From: Macrostomum lignano
Taxonomy: Eukaryota
Assembly: GCA_002269645.1 (NCBI GenBank)
Contig: NIVC01000830.1
Coordinates: forward strand, 1-64,000
DNA: 64,000 nucleotides
Direction of reading: 5' to 3'
In this document: positions 5,268 to 58,745 of the stretch, in pieces
Layout of the letters: each line of letters begins with the position of its first letter
Numbering within the stretch: position 1 is the first letter of the stretch
Notes under the pieces: generated by a model
Told to the model about the DNA's origin: nothing
Databases searched by the model: none
What the model saw: the letters and a program-made list of their open reading frames with translations, nothing else
Program-made: the position numbers and the translations under genes

Positions 5268-6353
5268 ATGCAGACAGCTTCCCAGCTTCATCTTCACGCA
5301 ATACCCAGGCTAAGCATCAACATGATTCCAGTTCTCTGCGATGCTACAAACGACACCGACTCGCTGTCGGCTGCCATCCAGTTCCCGGATCCCGGTCCGA
5401 CATCGCGCCAGCTGGCCGTGGCCATCCAGGCTCTCAGCCTGCTCGCTCTGGTGCTCAACTGCGGTCTGGTGGTGCTGCTCGCTCGGACCCCGCGGGCCCG
5501 CACCGGCGCCAAGGGAATTCCGCTGCTGGCCGCGGCAGAGATCGGCATGAACCTGTCCCTGCTGGTGATGCACGCTGAGGTCTGGACGCCAAGCTGCAGC
5601 TCGGCTGTTGACATTCTGGACAAATTCAACTACAGCTTTGAGGCCTGGCATCTGTTGCGCAATTTCTGGCTTTGTGCCATGACTGTCGCCAGGGCCAAGG
5701 CCGTTGCTCGTCCGTTGCAATCCCGCGACTCGATGGCGCCGAAGCGTCAGGCTTGCCTGTTCACCGGCTTCGGGCTAGCCAGCGCCGCCTGGAGCTGCCT
5801 GGACCTGACGCTGGTCAGCTGCGCGCCAAACTCGGTGGCCAAACTGGCTGGACGCGCGCTGGCCCTGCTGAGACACTTCTTGAACACCGTGGCCGCCGGG
5901 ACGGTGATCGCTGGCGCCTCCGCGCTCATCGTGCACCGGGTGCGGCGCACCAACGTGTTTCAGTTTCAGCGCAGGGAGGCCCAGGCCAGCCGCATCGTAG
6001 TGAGCATCGCCGTGGCCTTCGCTCTGCTGGAGCTGCCGTACGCACTGGTGGTGTACGTCGGCATCATCTGGACGATCGCTAACGGCAACAAGGCCGGCTT
6101 TCCCAAGGAGTTCGCCGAGACGCTGCACATTCTGTACAGAATCAACCACCTGCTGATTGTTGCCGACACCTGCCTGAATCTGTTTGTGCTGCTGTGCCTG
6201 AGCGCCAGCTTCCGACAGCAGATGATGCGGCGCATTTTGGCCTGCCGTCAAGCCGGCCAGAGACGGCGGCAACAGCGGAGTCTGCAGCAGCAGCGGCTGC
6301 AGAGGCGTTCACGAAGGGCTGCAGCGACTGCGGAGGGCGGAGCTGTCTGCTAG
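5268..6353 (+). CDS. Intronless divergent rhodopsin-like (class A) GPCR, peptide-receptor-like
   Basis: 361-aa ORF (alternative ATG at 5322) with seven hydrophobic segments. TM3 end RNFW..MTVARAKAV.RPL, TM6 FALLELP, TM7 DTCLNL..LCLSASFRQQM, basic C-tail. Confidence 0.8.
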   Translation: MQTASQLHLHAIPRLSINMIPVLCDATNDTDSLSAAIQFPDPGPTSRQLAVAIQALSLLALVLNCGLVVLLARTPRARTGAKGIPLLAAAEIGMNLSLLVMHAEVWTPSCSSAVDILDKFNYSFEAWHLLRNFWLCAMTVARAKAVARPLQSRDSMAPKRQACLFTGFGLASAAWSCLDLTLVSCAPNSVAKLAGRALALLRHFLNTVAAGTVIAGASALIVHRVRRTNVFQFQRREAQASRIVVSIAVAFALLELPYALVVYVGIIWTIANGNKAGFPKEFAETLHILYRINHLLIVADTCLNLFVLLCLSASFRQQMMRRILACRQAGQRRRQQRSLQQQRLQRRSRRAAATAEGGAVC

Positions 6354-9567: not shown

Positions 9568-10812
9568 ATGAATCAGGATTTCTTCAGCAAGGTTGGAGAT
9601 TTCAAGCTGACCGACTCGTCTCTGAGGTCAGACAACGATTTCTCCGACAGGCTCAACTACTATTACACGTCCATCATGATTGTGATCTTTGCCGTAGTCG
9701 TGAGCGCCAGGCAGTATGTTGGCAAGCCGCTGCAGTGCTGGATTCCTGCCGAGTTCAGCGAACAATGGGAGAAATATTCGGAGAGCTACTGCTGGATCAA
9801 GAACACCTACTTTGTGCCCATGAATGAGACCGGCGTGCCGGATCACGCGCACGTGAGACGTCAGTACGAGATCAACTACTACCAGTACGTGCCCTTCATC
9901 CTGGCGCTCATGGCCCTGGCCCTTAATGTGCCCAATATTGTGTGGAAGATTCTCAACACGCGCACCGGGGTCAGCTTGAAGACCATCGTGCACAATGCCT
10001 CTTCGGTGATCAGCGTTGACCCAATTGAGAGGCCTCAGGCCGTGGTCTCGCTGGCCAAGACATTCGAGGAGGCGGTGATCTTCGCTCTGGATGACAAGAA
10101 CCGCAAGAGTCGCACTGAGCGGCTTCGCAGGACCCTGCGCGGCGGCTTCGGGTCCTACCTGATCCTCAGCTACGTGTTCACCAAGATGCTCTTCTTCTGC
10201 GCCTCCTTCGGCCTCCTGCTGGCCGTCTGCTGCATGCTGAGCTCCAGCTACCGCGTCTTCGACTTGGGCGTCTTCAGCGAAATTGTCCAGGGCAAGAGCT
10301 GGCGCAACAGCGGCATCTTTCCGCGCATCACCCACTGCGACTTCGAGATCCGCCGGTTGAATGTCCGGCATCCCTACACTATGCAGTGCGTGCTCACCGT
10401 CAACCTGTTCAACGAAAAGATCTTCGTCTTCCTCTGGTTCTGGTACCTTGTCATCTCGGCAGCTAATATAGTCAGTCTGTTGTACTGGCTGCTGTACTGC
10501 CTGCCCTTTAAACAGTATGACTTCATTGACAGCTACCTGTCCACCAGCGACAAGTACCACGGAGAGCGGGACTCCGCGGCGCTGCAAGAGTTTGTCAACA
10601 GGCACCTGCGCAACGACGGAGTGTTTCTCCTGCGCCTGATCGCCTCGAACTCCGGCCACTTGGTCACCACCGAGCTGGTGCACCGGCTGTGGCGCAACAA
10701 GTTCTTCAAGGAGGAGGACGCTGCCGAGCTGGAGAGGGCCAAGGCCGCCGAGGCTGCTGCATCATCTGCGGCTGACGCGGCCACTTCCGAACCGATCACT
10801 GAGGCCAGATAG
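9568..10812 (+). CDS. Innexin (invertebrate gap-junction protein), intronless
   Basis: 414 aa with DRLNYYYT, QYVGKPLQCW.P, YCW, YYQYVPFIL, FPRITHCDF, QCVL..NLFNEKIFVFLWFW. Four TM segments and paired extracellular cysteines. Confidence 0.97.
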   Translation: MNQDFFSKVGDFKLTDSSLRSDNDFSDRLNYYYTSIMIVIFAVVVSARQYVGKPLQCWIPAEFSEQWEKYSESYCWIKNTYFVPMNETGVPDHAHVRRQYEINYYQYVPFILALMALALNVPNIVWKILNTRTGVSLKTIVHNASSVISVDPIERPQAVVSLAKTFEEAVIFALDDKNRKSRTERLRRTLRGGFGSYLILSYVFTKMLFFCASFGLLLAVCCMLSSSYRVFDLGVFSEIVQGKSWRNSGIFPRITHCDFEIRRLNVRHPYTMQCVLTVNLFNEKIFVFLWFWYLVISAANIVSLLYWLLYCLPFKQYDFIDSYLSTSDKYHGERDSAALQEFVNRHLRNDGVFLLRLIASNSGHLVTTELVHRLWRNKFFKEEDAAELERAKAAEAAASSAADAATSEPITEAR

Positions 10813-18372: not shown

Positions 18373-18730
18373 GGTACGTCTCTCTAGTGATTGAGTGATC
18401 AAGTGATCGATTGATCAAATGATTGAGTGATCGAGTGATTGAGTGATATTGTGATCGAGTGATTGAGTGATTGAGTGATTGAGTGATTGAGTGATAGTGC
18501 GATCGAGTGATCGATTGATTGAGTGATCGAGTGATTGAGTGATTGAGTGATCGAGTGATCGAGTGATCGAGTGATCGAGTGATTGAGTGATCGAGTGATT
18601 GAGTGATTGAGTGATCGAGTGATCGATTGATTGAGTGATCGAGTGATTGAGTGATTGAGTGATCGAGTGATCGAGTGATCGAGTGATCGAGTGATTGAGT
18701 GATCGAGTGATTGAGTGATTAAGTGATCGC
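18373..18730. repeat. 8-bp microsatellite (GAGTGATC/GAGTGATT)
   Basis: Direct tandem units. Confidence 0.95.
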
Positions 18731-19016
18731 TTGATCACATGCTCAAGGGTCAGCGGAATGGGCCTGACTGCTTGCCTCCTGGCTGGTCGCGGATCCACAC
18801 TTGCCTTATACGAGCGTACGAGCAATATTATTATATCTAATATATGTAATGTGTTTTACTTTTACACACTGTTACAGTGTCACAGTCTATTAATCACAGA
18901 GACAGTCGCCGTGCAAAAGGCTATTGATAGTGCATAAAAAGTACACAAAGCACTAACTAGTTTTAGTACCAGCTGCAATATAGTCAGTTGCAAGCGGGCG
19001 AACCGAACTGCACCGG

Positions 19017-20196
19017 TCAGCCGCACACGCCGAGACGCAGCCGAAACCTCAGTGTAGACCGGACCTCTGGGACCATGTACACCGGGCGCCTGTAAGGATC
19101 GAGTCCTCCAACGGCGCCGCCACTGACCTGATCCACCGGCGCGGCGCAGATCCGTCGCCTAGCCTCCATCAGAGCGTCCTCGACGTCGACCTCAGCCGTC
19201 GGATCGTCGCTACCGAGCCAATTGTCGATGACGTCGCACAGAGTCTGCACGAAGATGCTCCCGGAGACGCTGCACCTGTAGGCAGGTCGGCTCTCGCAGC
19301 AGGCGAACCCGAATAGGTAGTCAGCGCCCTCCGGCGACACTGCCAGCGGAGTTGCCCGCGGCTGCTCAGCCGCTGCTGGACCGTCGAGCTCCGGCGGCAG
19401 AGCGTAAGAGCAGGTGGCCGCCGCGACCACCTTGGAGCCGCGGCAAGCCTGAACGAAGAAGGCCTTCGGTTTGCCCGCCAACTCCGGGCAGCGGACGACG
19501 TCGAATGCGGCGGCGATGTCGTTAAGAGACACGCTGACGCCATCCACTCCGTAGACATTTCCGCCGGAGTCGCCGTGAGCCAGCAAGAAGCAGACGAAAG
19601 CGTCGGCGTTGCGGTGCCGGTGAGCCTTCTTTGCGGCCTTCGCGGCGGCTTCCAGCAATTGCCGGCCGGTGAGGTCGGTTCTCACCTCCACTATGAAGCC
19701 GAGACGCTGTTCGAAGAGCTGCTCGATTCTCTCCGCGTCCTGTTGGGTGCCGTGCCGCGGCTGAAGCTTGACGTAGTTCTCGTTGCTCAGGACCAAGCAG
19801 AGACCGCGCGGCTTCTCCGATATCGAATAGGCGGCCAGCTTCGGCAGCTGCGGTTCTGACGGCGGCAGCAGCGAAGGGTCGGTGAATCGGCGGGACGAGC
19901 TGACACCGGGCGGCTGCTGGAGGACTGCTGCTGGCTGGGATTGAGTCAGATCGATGGCCGGAGCATTCCAGCCAGATGAAGCGCTGGGAATGCTTGACTG
20001 TTGATGCAGATGCCTGGGCAGCTGGCTGGCTGCTGTCTGTTGCTGATGCAGATGCCTGGGCAGCTGGCTCTGGTTGGCAGCAACCAGCAGTTGCTGCGGA
20101 GGAGACTCGGACTCTGAGCGAAATCGGGTCAGCTGCTGCGACTCCTTCGGCTGGTGCGGCAGTTGATCGGGCGCGGTGGAGCACACAACGTCAGGC
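19017..20196 (-). CDS. Caspase (peptidase C14) exon with Q/P/S-rich N-terminal linker
   Basis: RGLCLVLSN, RHGTQQDAE, AFVCFLLAHG, PELAGKPKAFFVQACRG, ADYLFGFA, AYR..SGSIFVQTLC. The ORF has no ATG and begins at an acceptor TTTCCTTCTGTCAG|G (20196). Confidence 0.95.
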
Positions 20197-20340
20197 CTGA
20201 CAGAAGGAAAATCGTTGGGGGGTATTTAAGCATAGTTATCCTTGACTTATGTTAGTATGCATTTCCTAGCAAGCATGTCACGGTGGTCATGGTGAGAATG
20301 TGCTTACACCCTGCAAGCAATTAAATTCCCAACAACATAC

Positions 20341-21038
20341 AGCAACGTTTTTACTCCGCTCGGCAGCCACCGCTCAGTCTCGTCCATGCGGAGCTGCTCC
20401 GCCAATCGTCCATGCCCAACGGCCTCAGCAACGTCGGCTGCGGTCCGCTGGCGCCAGTCCACGGCACCAGGCTCGGCGCCAGCGTCAATGAGGCACCGGG
20501 CTAGAGCTTCATCGCCTGAGCAGGCGGCCCAGTGCAGTGGCCGGCGCTGGTAGCGGCTACAGGCGGCGTTCGGGTCGGCGCCAGCCTCCAGCAGCAGGCG
20601 GGCCAGCTCTGGCCGCTGGTGCTGGCAGCAGTCGGCCAGCGGAGTGGCGCCGTCTTCGTCACGACAGTTGATCAGCCTGGCGCCGACGGTGCTCCGCGAC
20701 AGCAGCTCCCTCACCACGTCGGCGTGTCCCCGCCTGACGGCCCAGTGCAGAGCGGAGGCGCCGGTCCAGCACTGGCAGTCCGAGCTCGCATTGACTCTGC
20801 TCGAGTCACTGACCACAACGCTGCCAGCCTCGCAGACGGTGGCGCCGGCGCTCAGCAGAAGTCGAACGGCCGGCAGGTGACCCCAGGCGGCCGCCGCGGC
20901 AAGCAGCGACGCCAGAAGCTGCTGCCTGCTTGGGTCATTGGCTCCTAGCGGATGCGGCTGCTGCTGCTGTTGAAGTCCAGCCTGCAGCTGCTGGCAGTCG
21001 CCGCACCGAGCTGCCAAACGCAGTGCTGGCAAATTCAT
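20341..21038 (-). CDS. Ankyrin-repeat exon (about 4-5 ANK repeats), probably exon 1 of the caspase gene
   Basis: AAAWGHLPAVRLLLSAGA; GASALHWAVRRGHADVVRELL; GATPLADCC..QRPELARLLLEAGADPN; PLHWAACSGDEALARCLIDAGA. Phase-2 donors GTATGT (20340) and GTAAGC (20307). Confidence 0.9.
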
Positions 21039-22033: not shown

Positions 22034-23426
22034 AGACTGTAGAAAACTATAAAAATGTAAAATTCCCAAATTCAGTGCTTGGCATAGAGAGCAAGTGAGA
22101 ATTAGTGCTGTCGCCCAGGCATCTCTCTACTGCTCTCTCATTGGCTGAGCTAGATTGGGCCTGCCCCCCCCCCCCCCCCCTAGGCTGAGTTTCGTCCGTC
22201 TTGCGTTCATTTGTGTACATTGAGTTAACAAATGCTTGTTCATTCTTAACCCCATATGCTCTTGAGGCTGCAAGCCCTGAGGAAGGAAAGGAATTTTAAC
22301 TTCTACATCAAATTTAAATTACATTAGCGCAGACAACTACTTTTTCACAATTTTAATTCCGAGTGACATATCTGTTATTCTAGTATCTGTGGAGTGACTC
22401 ATTTCCAGCGAGCACTCATTCTCTCCTATTCTCAATGACAAACGCAAACGGCCCTGTGTCTCGACTTCTCGACTTCCCAAGAGCAAATTGAAACGTTCGA
22501 GGTTGCTGCATGGTCTGTGATAACAAGTTTTCAATTTTACTCCGACTAAAGTTTAGTAATTAAATATTTTTTCGAATGATTAATTAAGAGGCTCTTTCAT
22601 TAAAACTGCTCTAAAATGTAACGGTTTCTACCAAAATATCTCGTTATAGTACCACGGATGCATGCATCAATTTTTGGAAATAACGAAAGTCGTTGATTTT
22701 GATGTTTAAAAAGTCATCTGGAGTTATTTTAACACGTGGTTTGAACTGCCTGCTTCAATCATAATAAAATATGTATGTAATTTATAAAACTATTTATTTC
22801 TCCCCAGGTTTCATGGGTCAGTTAGGCCGGAAACTAGCTGTATGATGTGTATGAGTGTATCATATTGAGTGGGACAGCTGTGTGTACTCGTAGGGGCGAA
22901 GCAAAATAAAGTTTGAGATGTTTTTCGTTGGATGGCCGCGCATATTTTTGTCAAGGACTTCTAGTCTAGAAGTCCTTGATTTTTGTCTGCCTGCCGAGGT
23001 ATGACGTGAATGAACTAAAACTTTTTTCTTGTCAAATGCGTTTTATGATTTATGATTTACTTCTTATTCAATCTGAGACAAGGAAAGGAATTACCTGAGG
23101 CCAACATATTTTTTCCAGGAATCGGTGGCGTCAGCGCTTTTTCCCTCAGGAGTCAAACAATCGCATTGAATTAAATTTCCTGAAGGGTTGGAATTGTGTC
23201 ATTATTTGCACTTATAAAGAGCAATAAAGCTGCGTATTTATTATTTATTTTTCAGCTTACGTCGGCGCCCAAAATGTTTCAAATTAGAGTAAAATAAAAA
23301 AGCGCTCTATTTTAACCAAATAGCGTATTTATTGATTAAAATGATTGATTGAAAATTCGGGGTTAGGTTCGAGGTAGAAGTACCCGGTTCGGGGTTAATC
23401 CCCGAACCCCGAACCAAGGGAGGGCT

Positions 23427-25604: not shown

Positions 25605-27010
25605 TGAGACAGGGAGATAAGAGAGGTAGACACAGGGAGATAAGAGAGGCAGAGACCGGGAGATAAGAGAGGTAGAGGCAGGGAGATAAGAGAGGTAAAG
25701 ACCGGGAGATAAGAGAGGTAGAGGCAGGGAGATACTGTAGGTAGAGACAGCTGGAGATAAGAGAGGTAAAGACAGGGAGATAAGAGAGGTAGAGACCGGG
25801 AGATAAGAGAGGTAGAGGCAGGGAGATAAGAGAGGTAGAGACAGGGAGATAAGAGAGGTAGAGACAGGGAGATGAATGAGGTAGAGATCGGGAGATAAGA
25901 GAGGTATAGGCAGGGAGATAAGAGAGGTAGAGACAGGGAGATAAGAGAGGTAGAGACCGGGAGATAAGAGAGGTGGAGGCAGGGAGATAAGCGAGATAGA
26001 GACAGGAAGATAAGAGAGGTAGAGCAGGGAGATAAGAGAGGTAGAGACAGGGAGATAAGAGAGGTAGAGACAGGGAGATAAGAGAGGTAGAGACAGGGAG
26101 ATAAGAGAGGTAGAGGCAGGGAGATACTGTAGGTAGAGACAGCTGGAGATAAGAGAGGTAAAGACAGGGAGATAAGAGAGGTAGAGACCGGGAGATAAGA
26201 GAGGTAGAGGCAGGGAGATAAGAGAGGTAGAGACAGGGAGATAAGAGAGGTAGAGACAGGGAGATGAATGAGGTAGAGATCGGGAGATAAGAGAGGTATA
26301 GGCAGGGAGATAAGAGAGGTAGAGACAGGGAGATAAGAGAGGTAGAGACCGGGAGATAAGAGAGGTGGAGGCAGGGAGATAAGCGAGATAGAGACAGGAA
26401 GATAAGAGAGGTAGAGCAGGGAGATAAGAGAGGTAGAGACAGGGAGATAAGAGAGGTAGAGACAGGGAGATAAGAGAGGTAGAGACAGGGAGATAAGAGG
26501 GGTAGAGACAGGGAGATAAGAGAGGTAGAGACAGGGAGATAAGAGAGGTAGAGACAGGGAGATAAGAGAGGTAGAGACCGGGAGATAAGAGAGGTGGAGG
26601 CAGGGAGATAAGCGAGATAGAGACAGGAAGATAAGAGAGGTAGAGCAGGGAGATAAGAGAGGTAGAGACAGGGAGATAAGAGAGGTAGAGACAGGGAGAT
26701 AAGAGAGGTAGAGACAGGGAGATAAGAGGGGTAGAGACAGGGAGATAAGAGAGGTAGAGACAGGGAGATAAGAGAGGTAGAGACAGGGAGATAAGAGAGG
26801 TAGAGACCGGGAGATAAGAGAGGTGGAGGCAGGGAGATAAGCGAGATAGAGACAGGAAGATAAGAGAGGTAGAGACAGGGAGATAAGAGAGGTAGAGACC
26901 GGGAGATAAGAGAGGTGGAGGCAGGGAGATAAGCGAGATAGAGACAGGAAGATAAGAGAGGTAGAGCAGGGAGATAAGAGAGGTAGAGACAGGGAGATAA
27001 GCGATATAGA
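25605..27010. repeat. 23-bp GA-rich minisatellite (GATAAGAGAGGTAGAGACAGGGA) with higher-order blocks
   Basis: About 1.4 kb array with recurring variant units. Confidence 0.96.
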
Positions 27011-34049: not shown

Positions 34050-35225
34050 TCAATTCTTCTTTGCAGCAGCAGCAGCGGCAGGCTTCACCCGAACCGAGCC
34101 TTTCAACAAATCGCGAATCGACGAAGCCGGACCCGTTGATCTGGCCGAACTGCCAGACGGCCCGGCCGATGTGGACGACGTTGACGAGGTGGACGGACCA
34201 GCTAGGCGAGGTCGTTTAGCACTGAGCATGAGCTCCCTGGCCAGTCTGGCATCCTCGTCCTCCACCTGCTGCTCCTCGGTAATCCTGCGCGACTCCACAT
34301 CGCGGATGACCGTGTCCACGATATCGGAGCCGGCGTTGCGCTTGTTGAGCTCTTTAACATCTTGCAGAGTTTCCAGCATTTCCATTTCGCGTTTAGATTG
34401 GCTGGTCCGCTTCTCCAGCTGCTTCATGGGGTCCTTGGCGTCTTCGGCCTCCTCCTCTTCCAGACGCTTGCGTTCCAGCATTTCGGCGGTGCGGAGGGCC
34501 TGTGGTAAATACAAGCTGAATTAAAATAACGACAGAGCATAAACTACACTACTTATAGTAGACTACGCAGCATATGACCTTCTTTAATTGGCTAAATGAT
34601 GTTTCCGTGCCTCTGGTCCTTCCTTCAGTGAGCGATGCTTCTCCCACCCCATCTGGTCCTTCAGTGAGCGATGCTTCTCCCACCCCATCTGGTCCTTCAG
34701 TGAGCGATGCTCCCACCCCATCTGGTCCATCAGTGAGCGATGCTCCCACCCCATCTGGTCCATCAGTGAGCGATGCTTCTCCCACCCCATCTGGTCCTTC
34801 AGTGGGCGATAATTCTCGACGTTCCATACCATATTTCGCAGTTTAATAAAGCAATGAGCAATGATAGACAAGAAAGCACAAACCTCAAAATTGCGCTTAG
34901 CCCCGTGCTCAATAGTATAGTCTCCATTCTCCAAGTCAGTCTTCCAAGTAATTTCCGAGCAGCAGCCTGGACACCGGATGTAGAACCTGTAGATCCTCAG
35001 GCCCATGTAGGTCTCGCCCTCGGCTATCTCCATTCTAGAATTGAACTTTCTGGCCTTGTAGATGTACTCGCCGCACGAGGCGCAGCGCATATTGCACGGG
35101 GCCATGGTTCTAATACTGAATGTTTTATTATTGCGACTCTTATTCTTGTCCCGCGGCAGTTTGGGTATCCGGGACGGGTCATAGTCGGGCGGATAGTACT
35201 TATTTAGCACTTTGCGCTCGGTCAT
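34050..35225 (-). CDS. YJU2: Splicing factor YJU2/CCDC94 (Cwf16), 2 exons (35225-34884, 34499-34050), 263 aa
   Basis: [21 protein letters not shown]; [20 protein letters not shown]; [30 protein letters not shown]|A; [20 protein letters not shown]. Phase-0 GT-AG intron. Confidence 0.97.
34612..34805. repeat. 33/36-bp tandem repeat in the YJU2 intron
   Basis: CTGGTCCTTCAGTGAGCGATGCTTCTCCCACCCCAT, about 5 copies. Confidence 0.9.
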
Positions 35226-42059: not shown

Positions 42060-54117
<12,058 letters not shown>

Positions 54118-54121
<4 letters not shown>

Positions 54122-55017: not shown

Positions 55018-56975
55018 GGACAGGACAGGACAGGAAGGATAGGACAGGACAGGACAGGACAGGACAGGAAAGGAATGGACAGGACAGGACAGAACAGGAC
55101 AGGACAGGAAAGGACAGGACAGGAAAGGACAGGAAAGGACAGGACAGGACAGGACAGGACAGGACAGGAAAGGACAGGACAAGACAGGACAGGAAAGGAC
55201 AGGAAAGGACAGGACAGGACAGGACAGGACAGGACAGGAAAGGACAGGACAGGATAGGACAGGACAGGATAGGACAGGACAGGACAGGACAGAACAGGAC
55301 AGGACAGGAAGGATAGGACAGGACAGGACAGGACAGGACAGGAAAGGAAAGGACAGGACAGGACAGGACAGGACAGGACAGGAAAGGACAGGACAGGAAA
55401 GGACAGGAAAGGACAGGACAGGACAGGACAGGACAGGACAGGAAAGGACAGGACAAGACAGGACAGGAAAGGACAGGAAAGGACAGGACAGGACAGGACA
55501 GGACAGGACAGGACAGGACAGGACAGGATAGGACAGGACAGGATAGGACAGGACAGGACAGGACAGAACAGGACAGGACAGGACAGGACAGGAAAGGACA
55601 GGACAGGACAGGACAGGAAAGGACAGGACAGGACAGGACAGGACAGAACAGGACAGGACAAGACAGGACAGGACAGGACAGGACAGGACAGGACAGGACA
55701 GGACAGGACAGGACAGGACAGGATAGGACAGGACAGGACAGGACAGGACAGGACAGGACAGAACAGGACAGGACAGGACAGGACAGGACAGGACAGGACA
55801 GGACAGGACAGGACAGGACAGAACAGGACAGGGAGGATAAGACAGGACAGGAAAGGATAGGACAGGACAGGAAGGACAGGACAGGACAGGACAGGACAGG
55901 ACAGAACAGGACAGGGAGGATAGGACAGGACAAGAAAGGACAGGAGAGGATAGGACAGGACAGGACAGAACAGGACAGGGAGGACAGGATAGGACAGAAC
56001 AGGACAGGATAGGACAGAACAGGACAGGATAGGACAGAACAGGACAGGATAGGACAGAACAGGACAGGATAGGACAGAACAGGACAGGATAGGACAGAAC
56101 AGGACAGGATAGGACAGAACAGGACAGGATAGGACAGAACAGGACAGGATAGGACAGAACAGGACAGGATAGGACAGAACAGGACAGGATAGGACAGAAC
56201 AGGACAGGATAGGACAGAACAGGACAGGATAGGACAGAACAGGACAGGATAGGACAGAACAGGACAGGATAGGACAGAACAGGACAGGATAGGACAGAAC
56301 AGGACAGGATAGGACAGGATATGAAGGACAGAAAAGGAAAGGACAGGGTAGGACAGGACAAGACAAGACAGGACAGGACAGGAAAGGACAGGACAGGACA
56401 GGACAGAACAGGACAGGACAGGACAGGACAGGACAGGACAGGACAGGACAGGACAGGACAGGACAGGACAGGACAGAACAGGACAGGGAGGATAAGACAG
56501 GACAGGAAAGGATAGGACAGGACAGGAAGGACAGGACAGGACAGGACAGGACAGGACAGAACAGGACAGGGAGGATAGGACAGGACAAGAAAGGACAGGA
56601 CAGGATAGGACAGGACAGGACAGAACAGGACAGGGAGGACAGGATAGGACAGAACAGGACAGGATAGGACAGAACAGGACAGGATAGGACAGAACAGGAC
56701 AGGATAGGACAGGATATGAAGGACAGAAAAGGAAAGGACAGGGTAGGACAGGACAAGACAAGACAGGACAGGACAGGACAGGACAGGACAGGACAGGACA
56801 GGACAGGACAGGACAGGACAGGAAGGACAGAAAAGGAAAGGACAGGGTAGGACAGGACAAGACAAGACAGGACAGGACAGGAAAGGACAGGAAAGGACAG
56901 GACAGGACAGGACAGGACAGGACAGGACAGGATGGGACAGAGCAGGAGAGGACAGAGCAGGAGAGGACAGAGCAG
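55018..56975. repeat. (GGACA)n pentanucleotide array with a 20-bp higher-order block
   Basis: About 2 kb. The Cys/Pro/Val/Leu/Ser ORFs on the minus strand are artefacts. Confidence 0.97.
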
Positions 56976-57664: not shown

Positions 57665-58745
57665 AGAGACGGAGAGGGAGAGTGCATGGGAGGGAGACAG
57701 AGACACACAGGAGGGAGAGTGCATGGGAGGGAGACAGAGACACACAGGAGGGAGAGTGCATGGGAGGGAGACAGAGACACACAGGAGGGAGAGTGCATGG
57801 GAGGGAGACAGAGACACACAGGAGGGAGAGTGCATGGGAGGGAGACAGAGACACACAGGAGGGAGAGTGCATGAGAGGGAGACAGAGACACAGGAGGGAG
57901 AGTGCATGAGAGGGAGACAGAGACACACAGGAGGGAGAGTGCATGAGAGGGAGACAGAGAGACACAGGAGGGAGAGTGCATGAGAGGGAGACAGAGACAC
58001 AAGGGGAGAGTACATGAGAGGGAGACAGACACACAGAGGGAGAGTGCATGAGAGGGAGAGCACATGAGAGGGAGAGTGCATGAGAGGGAGAGCGCATGAG
58101 AGGGAGAGTGCATGAGAGGGAGAGCGCATGAGAGGGAGAGTGCATGAGAGGGAGAGCACATGAGAGGGAGAGTGCATGAGAGGGAGAGCGCATGAGAGGG
58201 AGAGTGCATGAGAGAGAGAGCGCATGAGAGGGAGAGTGCATGAGAGGGAGAGTGCATGAGAGGGAGAGTGCATGAGAGGGAGAGTGCACGAGAGGGAGAG
58301 TGCATGAGAGGGAGAGTGCATGAGAGGGAGAGTGCATGAGAGGGAGAGTGCATGAGAGGGAGAGTGCATGAGAGGGAGAGTGCATGAGAGAGAGAGCGCA
58401 TGAGAGGGAGAGTGCATGAGAGGGAGAGTGCATGAGAGGGAGAGTGCATGAGAGGGAGAGTGCACGAGAGGGAGAGTGCATGAGAGGGAGAGTGCATGAG
58501 AGGGAGAGTGCATGAGAGGGAGAGTGCATGAGAGGGAGAGTGCATGAGAGGGAGAGTGCATGAGAGGGAGAGTGCATGAGAGGGAGAGTGCATGAGAGGG
58601 AGAGTGCATGAGAGGGAGAGTGCATGAGAGGGAGAGTGCATGAGAGGGAGAGTGCATGAGAGGGAGAGTGCATGAGAGGGAGAGTGCATGAGAGGGAGAG
58701 TGCACGAGAGGGAGAGTGCATGAGAGGAAGACAGAGACACAAGAG
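57665..58745. repeat. Compound minisatellite: 37-bp unit grading into a 16-bp unit (GAGAGGGAGAGTGCAT)
   Basis: Direct tandem units. Confidence 0.95.

What the first reader, a model, noticed from the sequence alone, without database searches (positions are those of the whole stretch)
19017..21038. Ankyrin-repeat prodomain fused to an intact caspase by an in-frame intron
Seen in sequence: the caspase ORF has no ATG and starts at a clean acceptor (TTTCCTTCTGTCAG|G, 20196) that needs two upstream bases. The ankyrin ORF just upstream offers two strong phase-2 donors (GTATGT at 20340, GTAAGC at 20307). Joining gives an open protein of about 625 aa: ANK x4-5, a Q/P/S-rich linker with a duplicated QLPRHLHQQ, then a caspase with His (AHG), Cys (QACRG) and both Asp-pocket arginines (RHGT, AYR). 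Established: initiator caspases normally use CARD or DED prodomains. Inference: an initiator-type caspase recruited through ankyrin repeats, i.e. a non-canonical activation platform. I cannot confirm novelty without a search.
Basis: partly seen in the sequence, partly recalled or inferred. Interest (0 to 1): 0.8.

Follow-up and report, generated by a model that had tools for sequence, protein, structure and literature searches.

The report
Ankyrin-prodomain caspase gene in a free-living flatworm
This is a real two-exon gene of the free-living flatworm Macrostomum lignano that joins six ankyrin repeats to an intact caspase-8-like protease; this layout is already published for parasitic flatworms, so the only new point is that it also occurs, in several gene families, in a non-parasitic one.

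Summary
On the minus strand, exon 1 (21038-20341) is joined through a 144-nt GTATGT...CAG intron to exon 2 (20196-19017). The 625-aa product is 100% identical to GenBank PAA76300.1 (BOX15_Mlig006436g2, Macrostomum lignano), whose annotation was built from RNA-seq transcripts. It has six ankyrin helix pairs, a roughly 130-aa disordered Q/P/S-rich linker, and a caspase domain with His440, Cys484, Arg380, Gln482 and Arg540 intact. That domain resembles caspase-8-type enzymes most.

"ANK caspases" were described in Schistosoma (2014) and across flatworms by Horkan et al. (2024). Those authors proposed the same initiator idea, but stated that the type is restricted to parasites and listed M. lignano as lacking it.

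I found at least six ANK-caspase gene families in M. lignano. One of them (Mlig019067) groups with the parasite ANK caspases at 88-92% neighbour-joining bootstrap. The window's gene is a divergent, weakly placed paralogue in a lineage-specific group.

Activation through the ankyrin domain is still an inference. I rate this a new member of a known kind, of moderate interest.

The parts
20341..21038 (-). Coding exon 1: ATG at 21038-21036, aa 1-232 plus two bases of codon 233. It holds the whole ankyrin-repeat prodomain.
   Evidence: ORF list and sequence. Exact mapping of PAA76300.1 onto the locus, aa 1-233. An in-frame stop lies 16 codons upstream of the ATG.
20361..21038 (-). Ankyrin-repeat domain, aa 1-226. 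Six helix-turn-helix repeats: helices 3-12/15-26, 36-51/55-63, 96-102/106-115, 133-139/143-151, 167-174/177-185 and 200-206/210-224. A disordered insertion lies at about aa 66-92, between repeats 2 and 3.
   Evidence: Pfam Ank_2 4.9e-27, Ank 3.9e-21, Ank_4 8.9e-15. AlphaFold2 model with mean pLDDT 86 and pTM 0.82. Foldseek best matches are DARPins and gankyrin, with TM-score normalised to target length up to 0.92.
20197..20340 (-). Single intron of 144 nt, GTATGT...TTTCCTTCTGTCAG. Exon 1 ends two bases into a codon. The intron contains an in-frame TAA at 20306-20304 and an unused alternative donor GTAAGC at 20307.
   Evidence: Sequence. The junction ...VKTLL|PDVVC is present in the transcript-derived PAA76300.1 and PAA59326.1 and in the older-assembly models P0122 and P0123. 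The GenBank annotation is built from RNA-seq transcripts.
19017..20196 (-). Coding exon 2: linker plus the complete caspase domain, then the stop TGA at 19019-19017. There is no in-frame ATG before the catalytic residues.
   Evidence: The first in-frame Met of exon 2 is at exon residue 343, after His (207) and Cys (251). The AUG of the spliced leader is out of frame and gives M-A-stop.
19830..20196 (-). Q/P/S-rich, probably disordered linker (about aa 227-355). It carries the duplicated SQLPRHLHQQ at aa 276-285 and 290-299 (nt 19998-20069).
   Evidence: Motif positions. pLDDT below 50 over aa 156-329 in the full-length model. No Pfam match in this stretch.
19383..19829 (-). Large (p20-like) subunit, aa 356-504. 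Arg380 (PRHGT, nt 19757-19755), His440 (AHG, nt 19577-19575), Gln482 and Cys484 (QACRG; Cys at nt 19445-19443). It ends at the candidate autoprocessing site PELD504|G.
   Evidence: Pfam Peptidase_C14. Residue-by-residue alignment to caspase-8 6px9/3h11. pLDDT above 90. Foldseek TM-score normalised to target length 0.84-0.89 to caspases-3/7/8. Asp positions.
19020..19382 (-). Remainder of the intersubunit loop and the small (p10-like) subunit, aa 505-625. Arg540 (AYR, nt 19277-19275), then GSIFVQTLC where the canonical motif is GSWFIQ, then the C-terminal VPEVRSTLRFRL strand.
   Evidence: Alignments. pLDDT 84-96 for aa 520-590 and low for the loop at aa 487-509.

Best explanation
The locus is one transcript-supported, two-exon gene of Macrostomum lignano (BOX15_Mlig006436g2). 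It encodes a 625-aa caspase zymogen with three parts: an N-terminal prodomain of six ankyrin repeats, a disordered Q/P/S-rich tether of about 130 aa, and a caspase-8-like catalytic domain with a complete Cys/His dyad and Asp-binding S1 pocket.

Proposed mechanism:
1. The ANK solenoid binds a partner protein or oligomeric scaffold that has not been identified.
2. This brings two zymogens together, and the catalytic domains dimerise (induced proximity, as for caspase-8/9).
3. The enzyme cuts its own intersubunit loop, most plausibly at PELD504|G.
4. The mature enzyme then cleaves short-prodomain executioner caspases or other Asp-containing substrates.

In a lineage reported to lack FADD and DED caspases, this family would take the apical caspase-8 role.

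Shown here: the gene structure, the domain layout, the intact catalytic residues, the caspase-8-like affinity, and membership of a multigene ANK-caspase family in this free-living species.

Inferred: activity, the cleavage site, the partner, and the initiator role.
For: - Gene model: the joined 625-aa product is identical to PAA76300.1. That annotation derives from genome-guided RNA-seq transcript assembly. Independent older models also read across the junction.
- Exon 2 cannot be translated on its own. It has no in-frame AUG before the active site, and the spliced-leader AUG is out of frame.
- Domains and residues.
- Folds: the caspase model has pLDDT above 90 and TM-score normalised to target length 0.84-0.89 to solved caspases. 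The ANK model has pLDDT 86 and matches DARPins and gankyrin.
- Caspase-8-like affinity: caspase-8 chains top the PDB list. The best single-domain hits are caspase-8-like proteins of fish, bird, frog, gastropods and a coral. Profile scores are 192.8 for DED/caspase-8-like against 127.8 for executioner and 123.0 for CARD.
- A canonical P3-Glu/P1-Asp site, PELD|G, lies in the low-confidence intersubunit loop.
- At least six ANK-caspase families exist in the same genome. The same initiator hypothesis is published for flatworm ANK caspases, and FADD and DED caspases are reported absent in M. lignano.
- There is precedent for an ANK domain binding an active caspase: Caiap with Caspa.
Against: - There are no biochemical or expression data for this gene. 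No paper mentions Mlig006436.
- The Trp of GSWF, which lines the S4 pocket in canonical caspases, is Ile here, so substrate preference may differ.
- The ANK domain shows no specific sequence similarity to the ANK domains of other ANK caspases, so a shared partner cannot be assumed.
- The two genomic copies are nearly identical, with 4 synonymous and 3 non-synonymous differences. That is too few to demonstrate purifying selection.
- The placement of this caspase domain is weak. It groups with other M. lignano ANK or kinase caspases at 55-64% neighbour-joining bootstrap and with the parasite ANK clade at under 6%.
Confidence: 0.55

Rival explanations
1. The ANK domain is not a recruitment module for an activation platform. 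It could be an intramolecular regulator that docks on and masks its own catalytic domain until released. It could be a substrate-selecting exosite. Or it could be a localisation tag that binds membrane or cytoskeleton. On any of these readings the enzyme could sit anywhere in the cascade.
For: Designed ANK proteins bind and inhibit caspases, as cited by Horkan et al.. In Caiap, the ANK domain binds the already active caspase and stabilises it rather than activating it. The disordered tether of about 130 aa is long enough for the ANK domain to fold back onto the protease. ANK domains of the different ANK caspases are not similar to each other, as would be expected if each recognises a different target.
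Against: The full-length AlphaFold model gave no confident ANK-caspase contact, although the ANK part of that model was poor. The catalytic domain is caspase-8-like rather than executioner-like. Long prodomains in characterised caspases are recruitment modules (established knowledge).
Confidence: 0.3
2. The fusion is an annotation or assembly artefact. On this reading there are two separate genes, an ANK protein ending at TAA 20304 and a caspase. They would be co-transcribed as an operon-like precursor, and the site at 20196 would be a spliced-leader trans-splice acceptor.
For: About 7% of M. lignano transcriptional units are polycistronic precursors, and trans-splice acceptors resemble YTNCAG. 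The acceptor here is CTGTCAG. The ANK ORF has its own stop inside the intron. Horkan et al. themselves warn that unusual prodomains may be chimeric predictions.
Against: Exon 2 has no in-frame AUG until residue 343 of the exon, beyond the catalytic His and Cys. The AUG at the end of the 35-nt spliced leader falls out of frame and gives M-A-stop. A strong GTATGT donor sits in the matching phase. Three independent gene models read ...VKTLL|PDVVC. At least five other M. lignano loci and many parasitic flatworms encode the same ANK-linker-caspase order.
Confidence: 0.05
3. The gene is a recent, redundant duplicate drifting towards loss of function. It would be a divergent paralogue with no role of its own, in a genome with large-scale duplication.
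For: It is the most divergent of the M. lignano ANK caspases, at 28-38% identity to its paralogues. It has unusual substitutions (SWR to AYR, GSWF to GSIF). It lacks the introns that its paralogues carry inside the caspase domain. The Mlig_3_7 assembly is highly redundant. Three of the 7 differences between the two copies are non-synonymous.
Against: The reading frame is open for 1,878 nt. All catalytic and S1 residues are intact. The caspase fold is predicted with high confidence. The gene is transcribed, since the annotation was built from transcripts. Other caspase-8-like proteins share the AYR and GS(I/V)(F/Y)(V/I)Q variants, so these are not signs of decay.
Confidence: 0.1

Closest known systems
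ANK caspases of parasitic flatworms (for example Echinococcus granulosus KAH9278879.1 and Schistosoma haematobium CAH8442799.1, deposited as 'caspase-8'; Lee et al. 2014; Horkan et al. 2024)
   Same: Same order of parts: N-terminal ankyrin repeats, a long low-complexity linker, and a C-terminal p20/p10 domain with QACRG. They share A(Y/Q)R and GS(I/V)(Y/F)(I/V)QxLC in place of SWR...GSWFIQ, and a PEV(R/K)xTL C-terminal strand. The same initiator hypothesis has been proposed for them.
   Different: This gene's caspase domain does not group with them: under 6% bootstrap and profile score 109 against 190-193 for other groups. The paralogue Mlig019067 is their M. lignano counterpart (88-92% bootstrap). 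The host here is free-living. The linker is shorter, and there is no long insertion between the two subunits.
M. lignano paralogues: Mlig001045, Mlig000705/009621, the P0285 family, Mlig019067, and the kinase-bearing caspases PAA54824 and Mlig030125
   Same: Same genome, same ANK-linker-caspase layout, and QACR(G/T) active sites. This gene groups weakly (55-64% bootstrap) with Mlig001045, Mlig009621, P0285 and the kinase-prodomain caspase PAA54824.
   Different: Only 28-38% identity in the caspase domain. The ANK domains are not specifically similar. Intron positions are not shared: this gene has a single intron and an intronless caspase domain, whereas the paralogues have 2-7 introns, some inside p20.
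DED caspases (caspase-8/10 and invertebrate DED caspases)
   Same: These are the closest catalytic domains by sequence and by profile. They share the long prodomain and the Asp-containing intersubunit loop. The apical role is presumed to be shared.
   Different: There are no death effector domains. FADD, the adaptor of DED caspases, is reported absent from flatworms.
Caiap (CARD + 16 ANK repeats) with zebrafish Caspa, and designed ankyrin proteins that bind caspases
   Same: Ankyrin repeats used as a caspase-binding or caspase-regulating surface.
   Different: In those cases the ANK module is on a separate protein and acts in trans. Here it is part of the caspase polypeptide. No sequence relationship was tested or is implied.

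Membership tests
Caspases (peptidase family C14A) | Peptidase_C14 profile match above the curated threshold | tested here: met
   PF00656, 143 bits against a cut-off of 21.4, E=1.5e-41, aa 363-582.
Caspases (peptidase family C14A) | Catalytic His in (S/A)HG and Cys in QACxG | tested here: met
   AHG His440 and QACRG Cys484 align with the caspase-8 SHG and QACQG motifs.
Caspases (peptidase family C14A) | Asp-binding S1 pocket (Arg179, Gln283, Arg341 in caspase-1 numbering) | tested here: met
   Arg380 (PRHGT), Gln482 and Arg540 (AYR) align to the corresponding caspase-8 residues.
Caspases (peptidase family C14A) | Caspase alpha/beta fold with large and small subunits | tested here: met
   AlphaFold2 pLDDT above 90 over the core. 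Foldseek TM-score normalised to target length 0.84-0.89 to caspases-3/7/8/6/9 and CED-3. This is a prediction, not a solved structure.
Caspases (peptidase family C14A) | Cleavage after aspartate | not testable with these tools
   Requires a recombinant enzyme assay.
Ankyrin-repeat proteins | Tandem 33-residue helix-turn-helix repeats forming a solenoid | tested here: met
   Five Pfam Ank families above their cut-offs. Six helix pairs in a model with pLDDT 86. Foldseek matches to DARPins and gankyrin.
ANK caspases in the sense of Horkan et al. 2024 | Ankyrin prodomain N-terminal to p20/p10 in one polypeptide | tested here: met
   The junction has transcript support.
ANK caspases in the sense of Horkan et al. 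2024 | Caspase domain falls inside the monophyletic ANK-caspase clade that is sister to DED caspases | tested here: inconclusive
   Neighbour-joining with bootstrap only. This gene groups with M. lignano ANK2/3/6 and the kinase caspase at 55-64%. It joins the parasite clade plus Mlig019067 in under 6% of replicates. The backbone of the tree is unresolved. The profile of the parasite clade scores 109, against 190-193 for other groups. The paralogue Mlig019067 does meet this feature (88-92%).
ANK caspases in the sense of Horkan et al. 2024 | Restricted to parasitic platyhelminths, as stated in the paper | tested here: not met
   The host is the free-living M. lignano. The paper's own table gives 'N/A' for ANK caspase in this species. 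It is the published circumscription that fails, not the layout.
Initiator (apical) caspases | Long N-terminal prodomain that carries a protein-interaction module | tested here: met
   About 355 aa precede the p20 subunit, with six ANK repeats.
Initiator (apical) caspases | Activation by adaptor-driven proximity or dimerisation, and the ability to process executioner procaspases | not testable with these tools
   Only indirect support: caspase-8-like catalytic domain and a PELD|G site in the intersubunit loop.
DED caspases (caspase-8/10) | Tandem death effector domains in the prodomain | tested here: not met
   No DED or CARD match in Pfam at E<=0.01. The upstream region has an in-frame stop and shows no coding potential.

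The most novel reading that the evidence does not exclude
Ankyrin-prodomain caspases did not arise as an adaptation to parasitism. They were already present before the macrostomorph lineage separated from the lineage leading to parasitic flatworms. In M. lignano they radiated into at least six gene families, including kinase-ANK-caspase fusions, which together replace the lost FADD/DED-caspase pathway. On this reading the window's gene is a lineage-specific apical caspase with its own undiscovered ANK-binding activation platform, which would be a death or immune signalling route with no counterpart in the standard model organisms.
Probability: 0.35. Interest if true: 0.55.

Novelty: new member of a known kind. 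Interest (0 to 1): 0.38.

Why it matters
The layout itself is published, so its existence is not news. The useful point is a correction. The only comparative study of these enzymes concludes that ANK caspases are confined to parasitic flatworms and links them to parasitism. It records M. lignano as having none.

This window, together with at least five further M. lignano gene families, shows that the type exists and has expanded in a free-living, early-branching flatworm. One of those families groups with the parasite enzymes at about 90% bootstrap.

M. lignano has transgenesis and RNAi. That makes the open questions experimentally approachable outside a parasite: what the ankyrin prodomain binds, and whether these enzymes replace caspase-8.

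Tried and rejected
- Word-index protein search with the caspase domain alone: it returned nothing, not even the protein itself. I treat this as a retrieval failure, not as evidence.
- Profile search with six ANK-caspase catalytic domains: it scored only 39 proteins and found no parasite ANK caspases. I took their sequences from the supplement of the bioRxiv version of Horkan et al. instead.
- P0002 (596 aa, 44% identity): it first looked like a paralogue. It is a frameshifted model of the same gene from the older assembly and was rejected.
- Raw similarity ranking of caspase domains: it does not resolve relationships, because long inter-subunit insertions split the parasite sequences.
- The second genomic copy (L002): it is nearly identical, with 7 substitutions and an identical intron. 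It gives no useful test of exon-versus-intron conservation or of selection.
- Shared intron positions as evidence for a single origin of the fusion: none are shared among the four paralogues examined.
- Specific similarity between ANK prodomains: none. Even Mlig019067 against the parasite ANK domains scores only 11-16 bits, so this test cannot separate common origin from convergence.
- Full-length AlphaFold run with a mixed ANK and caspase alignment: the ANK half was poorly modelled. I repeated the run on the ANK domain alone.
- Literature searches for the locus tags and for SRR23782937 found nothing.
- Alternative donor GTAAGC at 20307 (636-aa product): rejected because every deposited model uses GTATGT.
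- No maximum-likelihood or Bayesian tree software was available. All trees are neighbour-joining on Kimura distances.
Full report
**What is in the sequence.** The feature lies on the minus strand. An ORF starting at ATG 21038 runs to a TAA at 20306-20304. A second ORF is open from 20196 to a TGA at 19019-19017.
- The acceptor TTTCCTTCTGTCAG|G (AG at 20198-20197) begins exon 2 with the third base of a codon.
- Of the GT dinucleotides between 20420 and 20197, those in the matching phase include GCTGTATGT at 20340 and GGTGTAAGC at 20307.
- Joining at 20341|20196 removes 144 nt and gives an open 625-aa protein. The second donor gives 636 aa.
- An in-frame stop lies 16 codons upstream of the ATG. 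The upstream region is AT-rich, about 40% GC against 64% in the exons.

**Identity of the locus and support for the splice.**
- The 625-aa product is 100% identical over its full length to NCBI PAA76300.1, "hypothetical protein BOX15_Mlig006436g2" of Macrostomum lignano.
- The window is NIVC01000830.1 positions 1-64000 of assembly GCA_002269645.1, and the annotated gene spans exactly 19017-21038.
- A second copy, PAA59326.1 on NIVC01002277.1, differs by 7 substitutions in the CDS (4 synonymous, 3 non-synonymous) and has an identical intron.
- The GenBank annotation of this assembly was made from a genome-guided RNA-seq transcript assembly, with ORFs called by TransDecoder (Wudarski et al. 2017, PMC5730564). 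The junction therefore rests on transcripts, not on ab initio prediction.
- Two partial models from the older assembly also read ...VKTLL|PDVVC.

**The operon alternative.** M. lignano has operon-like precursors that are resolved by spliced-leader trans-splicing, so I tested whether 20196 could be a trans-splice acceptor for a stand-alone caspase mRNA.
- The 35-nt leader ends in ATG (PMC8629364).
- Joined to exon 2, that ATG reads M-A-stop.
- The caspase frame has no Met until residue 343 of the exon, beyond the catalytic His and Cys.
- A caspase-only mRNA would therefore not be translatable, which argues strongly for the cis-spliced fusion.
- Intron retention would give a 244-aa ANK-only protein.

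**Anatomy of the protein.**
- Domains: Pfam finds Peptidase_C14 (E=1.5e-41, aa 363-582) and five ankyrin families (Ank_2 4.9e-27) and nothing else. There is no DED or CARD.
- ANK domain: an AlphaFold2 model of aa 1-232 (pLDDT 86, pTM 0.82) shows six helix pairs with a disordered insertion at about aa 66-92. It matches DARPins and gankyrin.
- Linker: residues of about 227-355 are Q/P/S-rich, contain SQLPRHLHQQ twice, and are modelled with pLDDT below 50.
- Caspase core: it is modelled with pLDDT above 90. It superposes on caspases-3/7/8/6/9 with TM-score normalised to target length 0.84-0.89.
- Catalytic residues: alignment to caspase-8 places Arg380, His440, Gln482, Cys484 and Arg540 on the S1 and catalytic residues.
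- Variant motif: the Trp of canonical GSWF is Ile (GSIF). Several caspase-8-like proteins show the same kind of substitution.
- Possible processing site: the flexible intersubunit loop (aa 487-509) contains PELD504|G, a P3-Glu/P1-Asp site.

**What kind of caspase.**
- Caspase-8 chains head the PDB sequence hits.
- In an exhaustive search of 1.84 billion representative proteins, no protein other than the gene's own cluster and an older frameshifted model of the same gene (P0002, 70%) exceeds about 46% identity.
- The best single-domain matches are caspase-8-like proteins of a fish, a cormorant, a toad, Haliotis, Littorina and a coral. The M. lignano kinase-prodomain caspase PAA54824 ranks third.
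- Profile HMMs built per group score this domain as follows: DED/caspase-8-like 192.8; M. lignano ANK2/3/6/kinase 189.9; executioner 127.8; CARD 123.0; parasite ANK caspases 109.3.
- It is therefore an initiator-type, caspase-8-like domain, but a divergent one.

**What is already known.**
- Horkan et al. (Genome Biol Evol 2024, PMC11463336) describe "ANK caspases" as a platyhelminth clade that is sister to DED caspases and was first noticed in Schistosoma (Lee et al. 2014). They propose that these enzymes are initiators recruited through the ankyrin prodomain, in animals that have lost FADD.
- They state that the clade is restricted to parasitic species.
- Their supplementary table marks ANK caspase as "N/A" for M. 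lignano.
- Their M. lignano sequence list lacks PAA76300. It includes PAA88208 without an ANK tag.
- The full-text library holds no other paper that uses these terms, and none that mentions the locus tags.

**What I found beyond that.** M. lignano encodes at least six ANK-caspase families:
- this gene (Mlig006436/011129);
- Mlig001045;
- Mlig000705/009621;
- Mlig019067, which UniProt names "Caspase-8";
- the P0285 family;
- Mlig030125, which has a protein kinase, a degenerate caspase (QTHRD), ANK repeats and an active caspase.

I took the parasite ANK-caspase sequences from the preprint supplement and built neighbour-joining bootstrap trees.
- Mlig019067 joins the Schistosoma, Echinococcus and Hymenolepis ANK caspases at 88-92%.
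- The window's gene groups with Mlig001045, Mlig009621, P0285 and the kinase caspase at only 55-64%.
- The link between these two groups is unresolved.
- Intron positions are not shared among the paralogues. This gene has a single intron and an intronless caspase domain.
- The ANK domains are not specifically similar even between the apparent orthologues.
- So the data cannot say whether the fusion arose once or several times.
- The layout also occurs in a jellyfish (Sanderia) and, according to the paper, in the annelid Alitta virens.

**Mechanism.** The best-supported reading is a zymogen whose ANK solenoid binds an unidentified partner. Clustering then drives dimerisation of the caspase-8-like domains, autoprocessing follows (candidate site PELD504|G), and the enzyme cleaves downstream caspases.
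- Only the layout, the intact residues and the caspase-8-like affinity are shown. The rest is inference.
- A serious rival is that the ANK domain regulates or targets the protease, by autoinhibition, as an exosite or by localisation, rather than recruiting it to a platform. Caiap and designed ankyrin proteins show that ANK surfaces can bind caspases directly.
- The artefact and decaying-duplicate readings are unlikely, for the reasons given above.

**Verdict.** What remains is a modest but concrete correction: ANK caspases are present and expanded in a free-living flatworm, with this gene as a divergent member. I classify it as a new member of a known kind, of moderate interest.

Noticed in passing
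Outside the window: M. lignano NIVC01000010.1 (L003 1501-5419), protein P0167/PAA94436 (Mlig019067): This 599-aa ANK + caspase protein groups with the Schistosoma, Echinococcus and Hymenolepis ANK caspases at 88-92% neighbour-joining bootstrap. One of its introns splits the active-site motif as Q|ACRG. The published survey had this sequence (as PAA88208) but did not tag it as an ANK caspase.
   Followed up: partly
Outside the window: P0228/PAA89054 (Mlig030125g1, 1072 aa): Four-part layout: protein kinase domain, a caspase-like domain with a degenerate active site (QTHRD, no Cys), ankyrin repeats, and a second caspase domain with QACRG. It differs from the kinase-prodomain caspase (PAA54824) reported in the literature.
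   Followed up: partly
Outside the window: P0143 (Littorina saxatilis XP_070209661.1, 559 aa): A caspase-8-like domain preceded by an AID/APOBEC-like deaminase domain (Pfam APOBEC4 at E=6.4e-8, above its cut-off, and NAD1 at 3.5e-5). This is an unusual prodomain that I did not pursue.
   Followed up: no
Outside the window: P0135 (Sanderia malayensis, jellyfish, 1127 aa) and P0262 (Logan SRR23782937, L006 2106-3755): ANK + caspase layouts outside M. lignano. The jellyfish model has two ANK-caspase units in tandem. P0262 is an Mlig019067-like ANK caspase from a sequencing run whose organism I could not identify.
   Followed up: partly
window 18386-18729: An 8-nt tandem array (AGTGATCG, about 43 copies) lies about 290 nt downstream of the caspase stop codon. 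It creates a spurious 136-aa ORF at 18415-18825 on the minus strand.
   Followed up: no
window 22164-22180: A homopolymer run of 17 G on the minus strand (poly-C on the plus strand) in the AT-rich region about 1.1 kb upstream of the gene.
   Followed up: no
window 25606-27001, 42118-44102, 44722-45481, 48423-49827, 55018-56970, 57672-58731: The window is packed with long tandem arrays: Tandem Repeats Finder lists 38 rows with score of 200 or more, some overlapping. Examples are (AGAC)n of about 2 kb, (GGACA)n of about 2 kb, (CTA)n of 0.76 kb, and 23-24-nt units repeated about 60 times. They cause extreme GC and AT skews and many spurious long ORFs.
   Followed up: no
window 9568-10812 (+), 34587-35225 (-), 5268-6353 (+): Neighbouring coding regions: a complete single-ORF innexin (Pfam E=1.2e-87), an exon encoding the N-terminal part of a Saf4/Yju2 splicing factor (E=8.7e-49), and a weak rhodopsin-type GPCR-like ORF (E=5e-7, just below the Pfam cut-off).
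   Followed up: partly
window 52169-54121 (+): A 650-aa GC-rich ORF containing diverged 162-nt (54-aa) tandem repeats, with no Pfam match.
   Followed up: no
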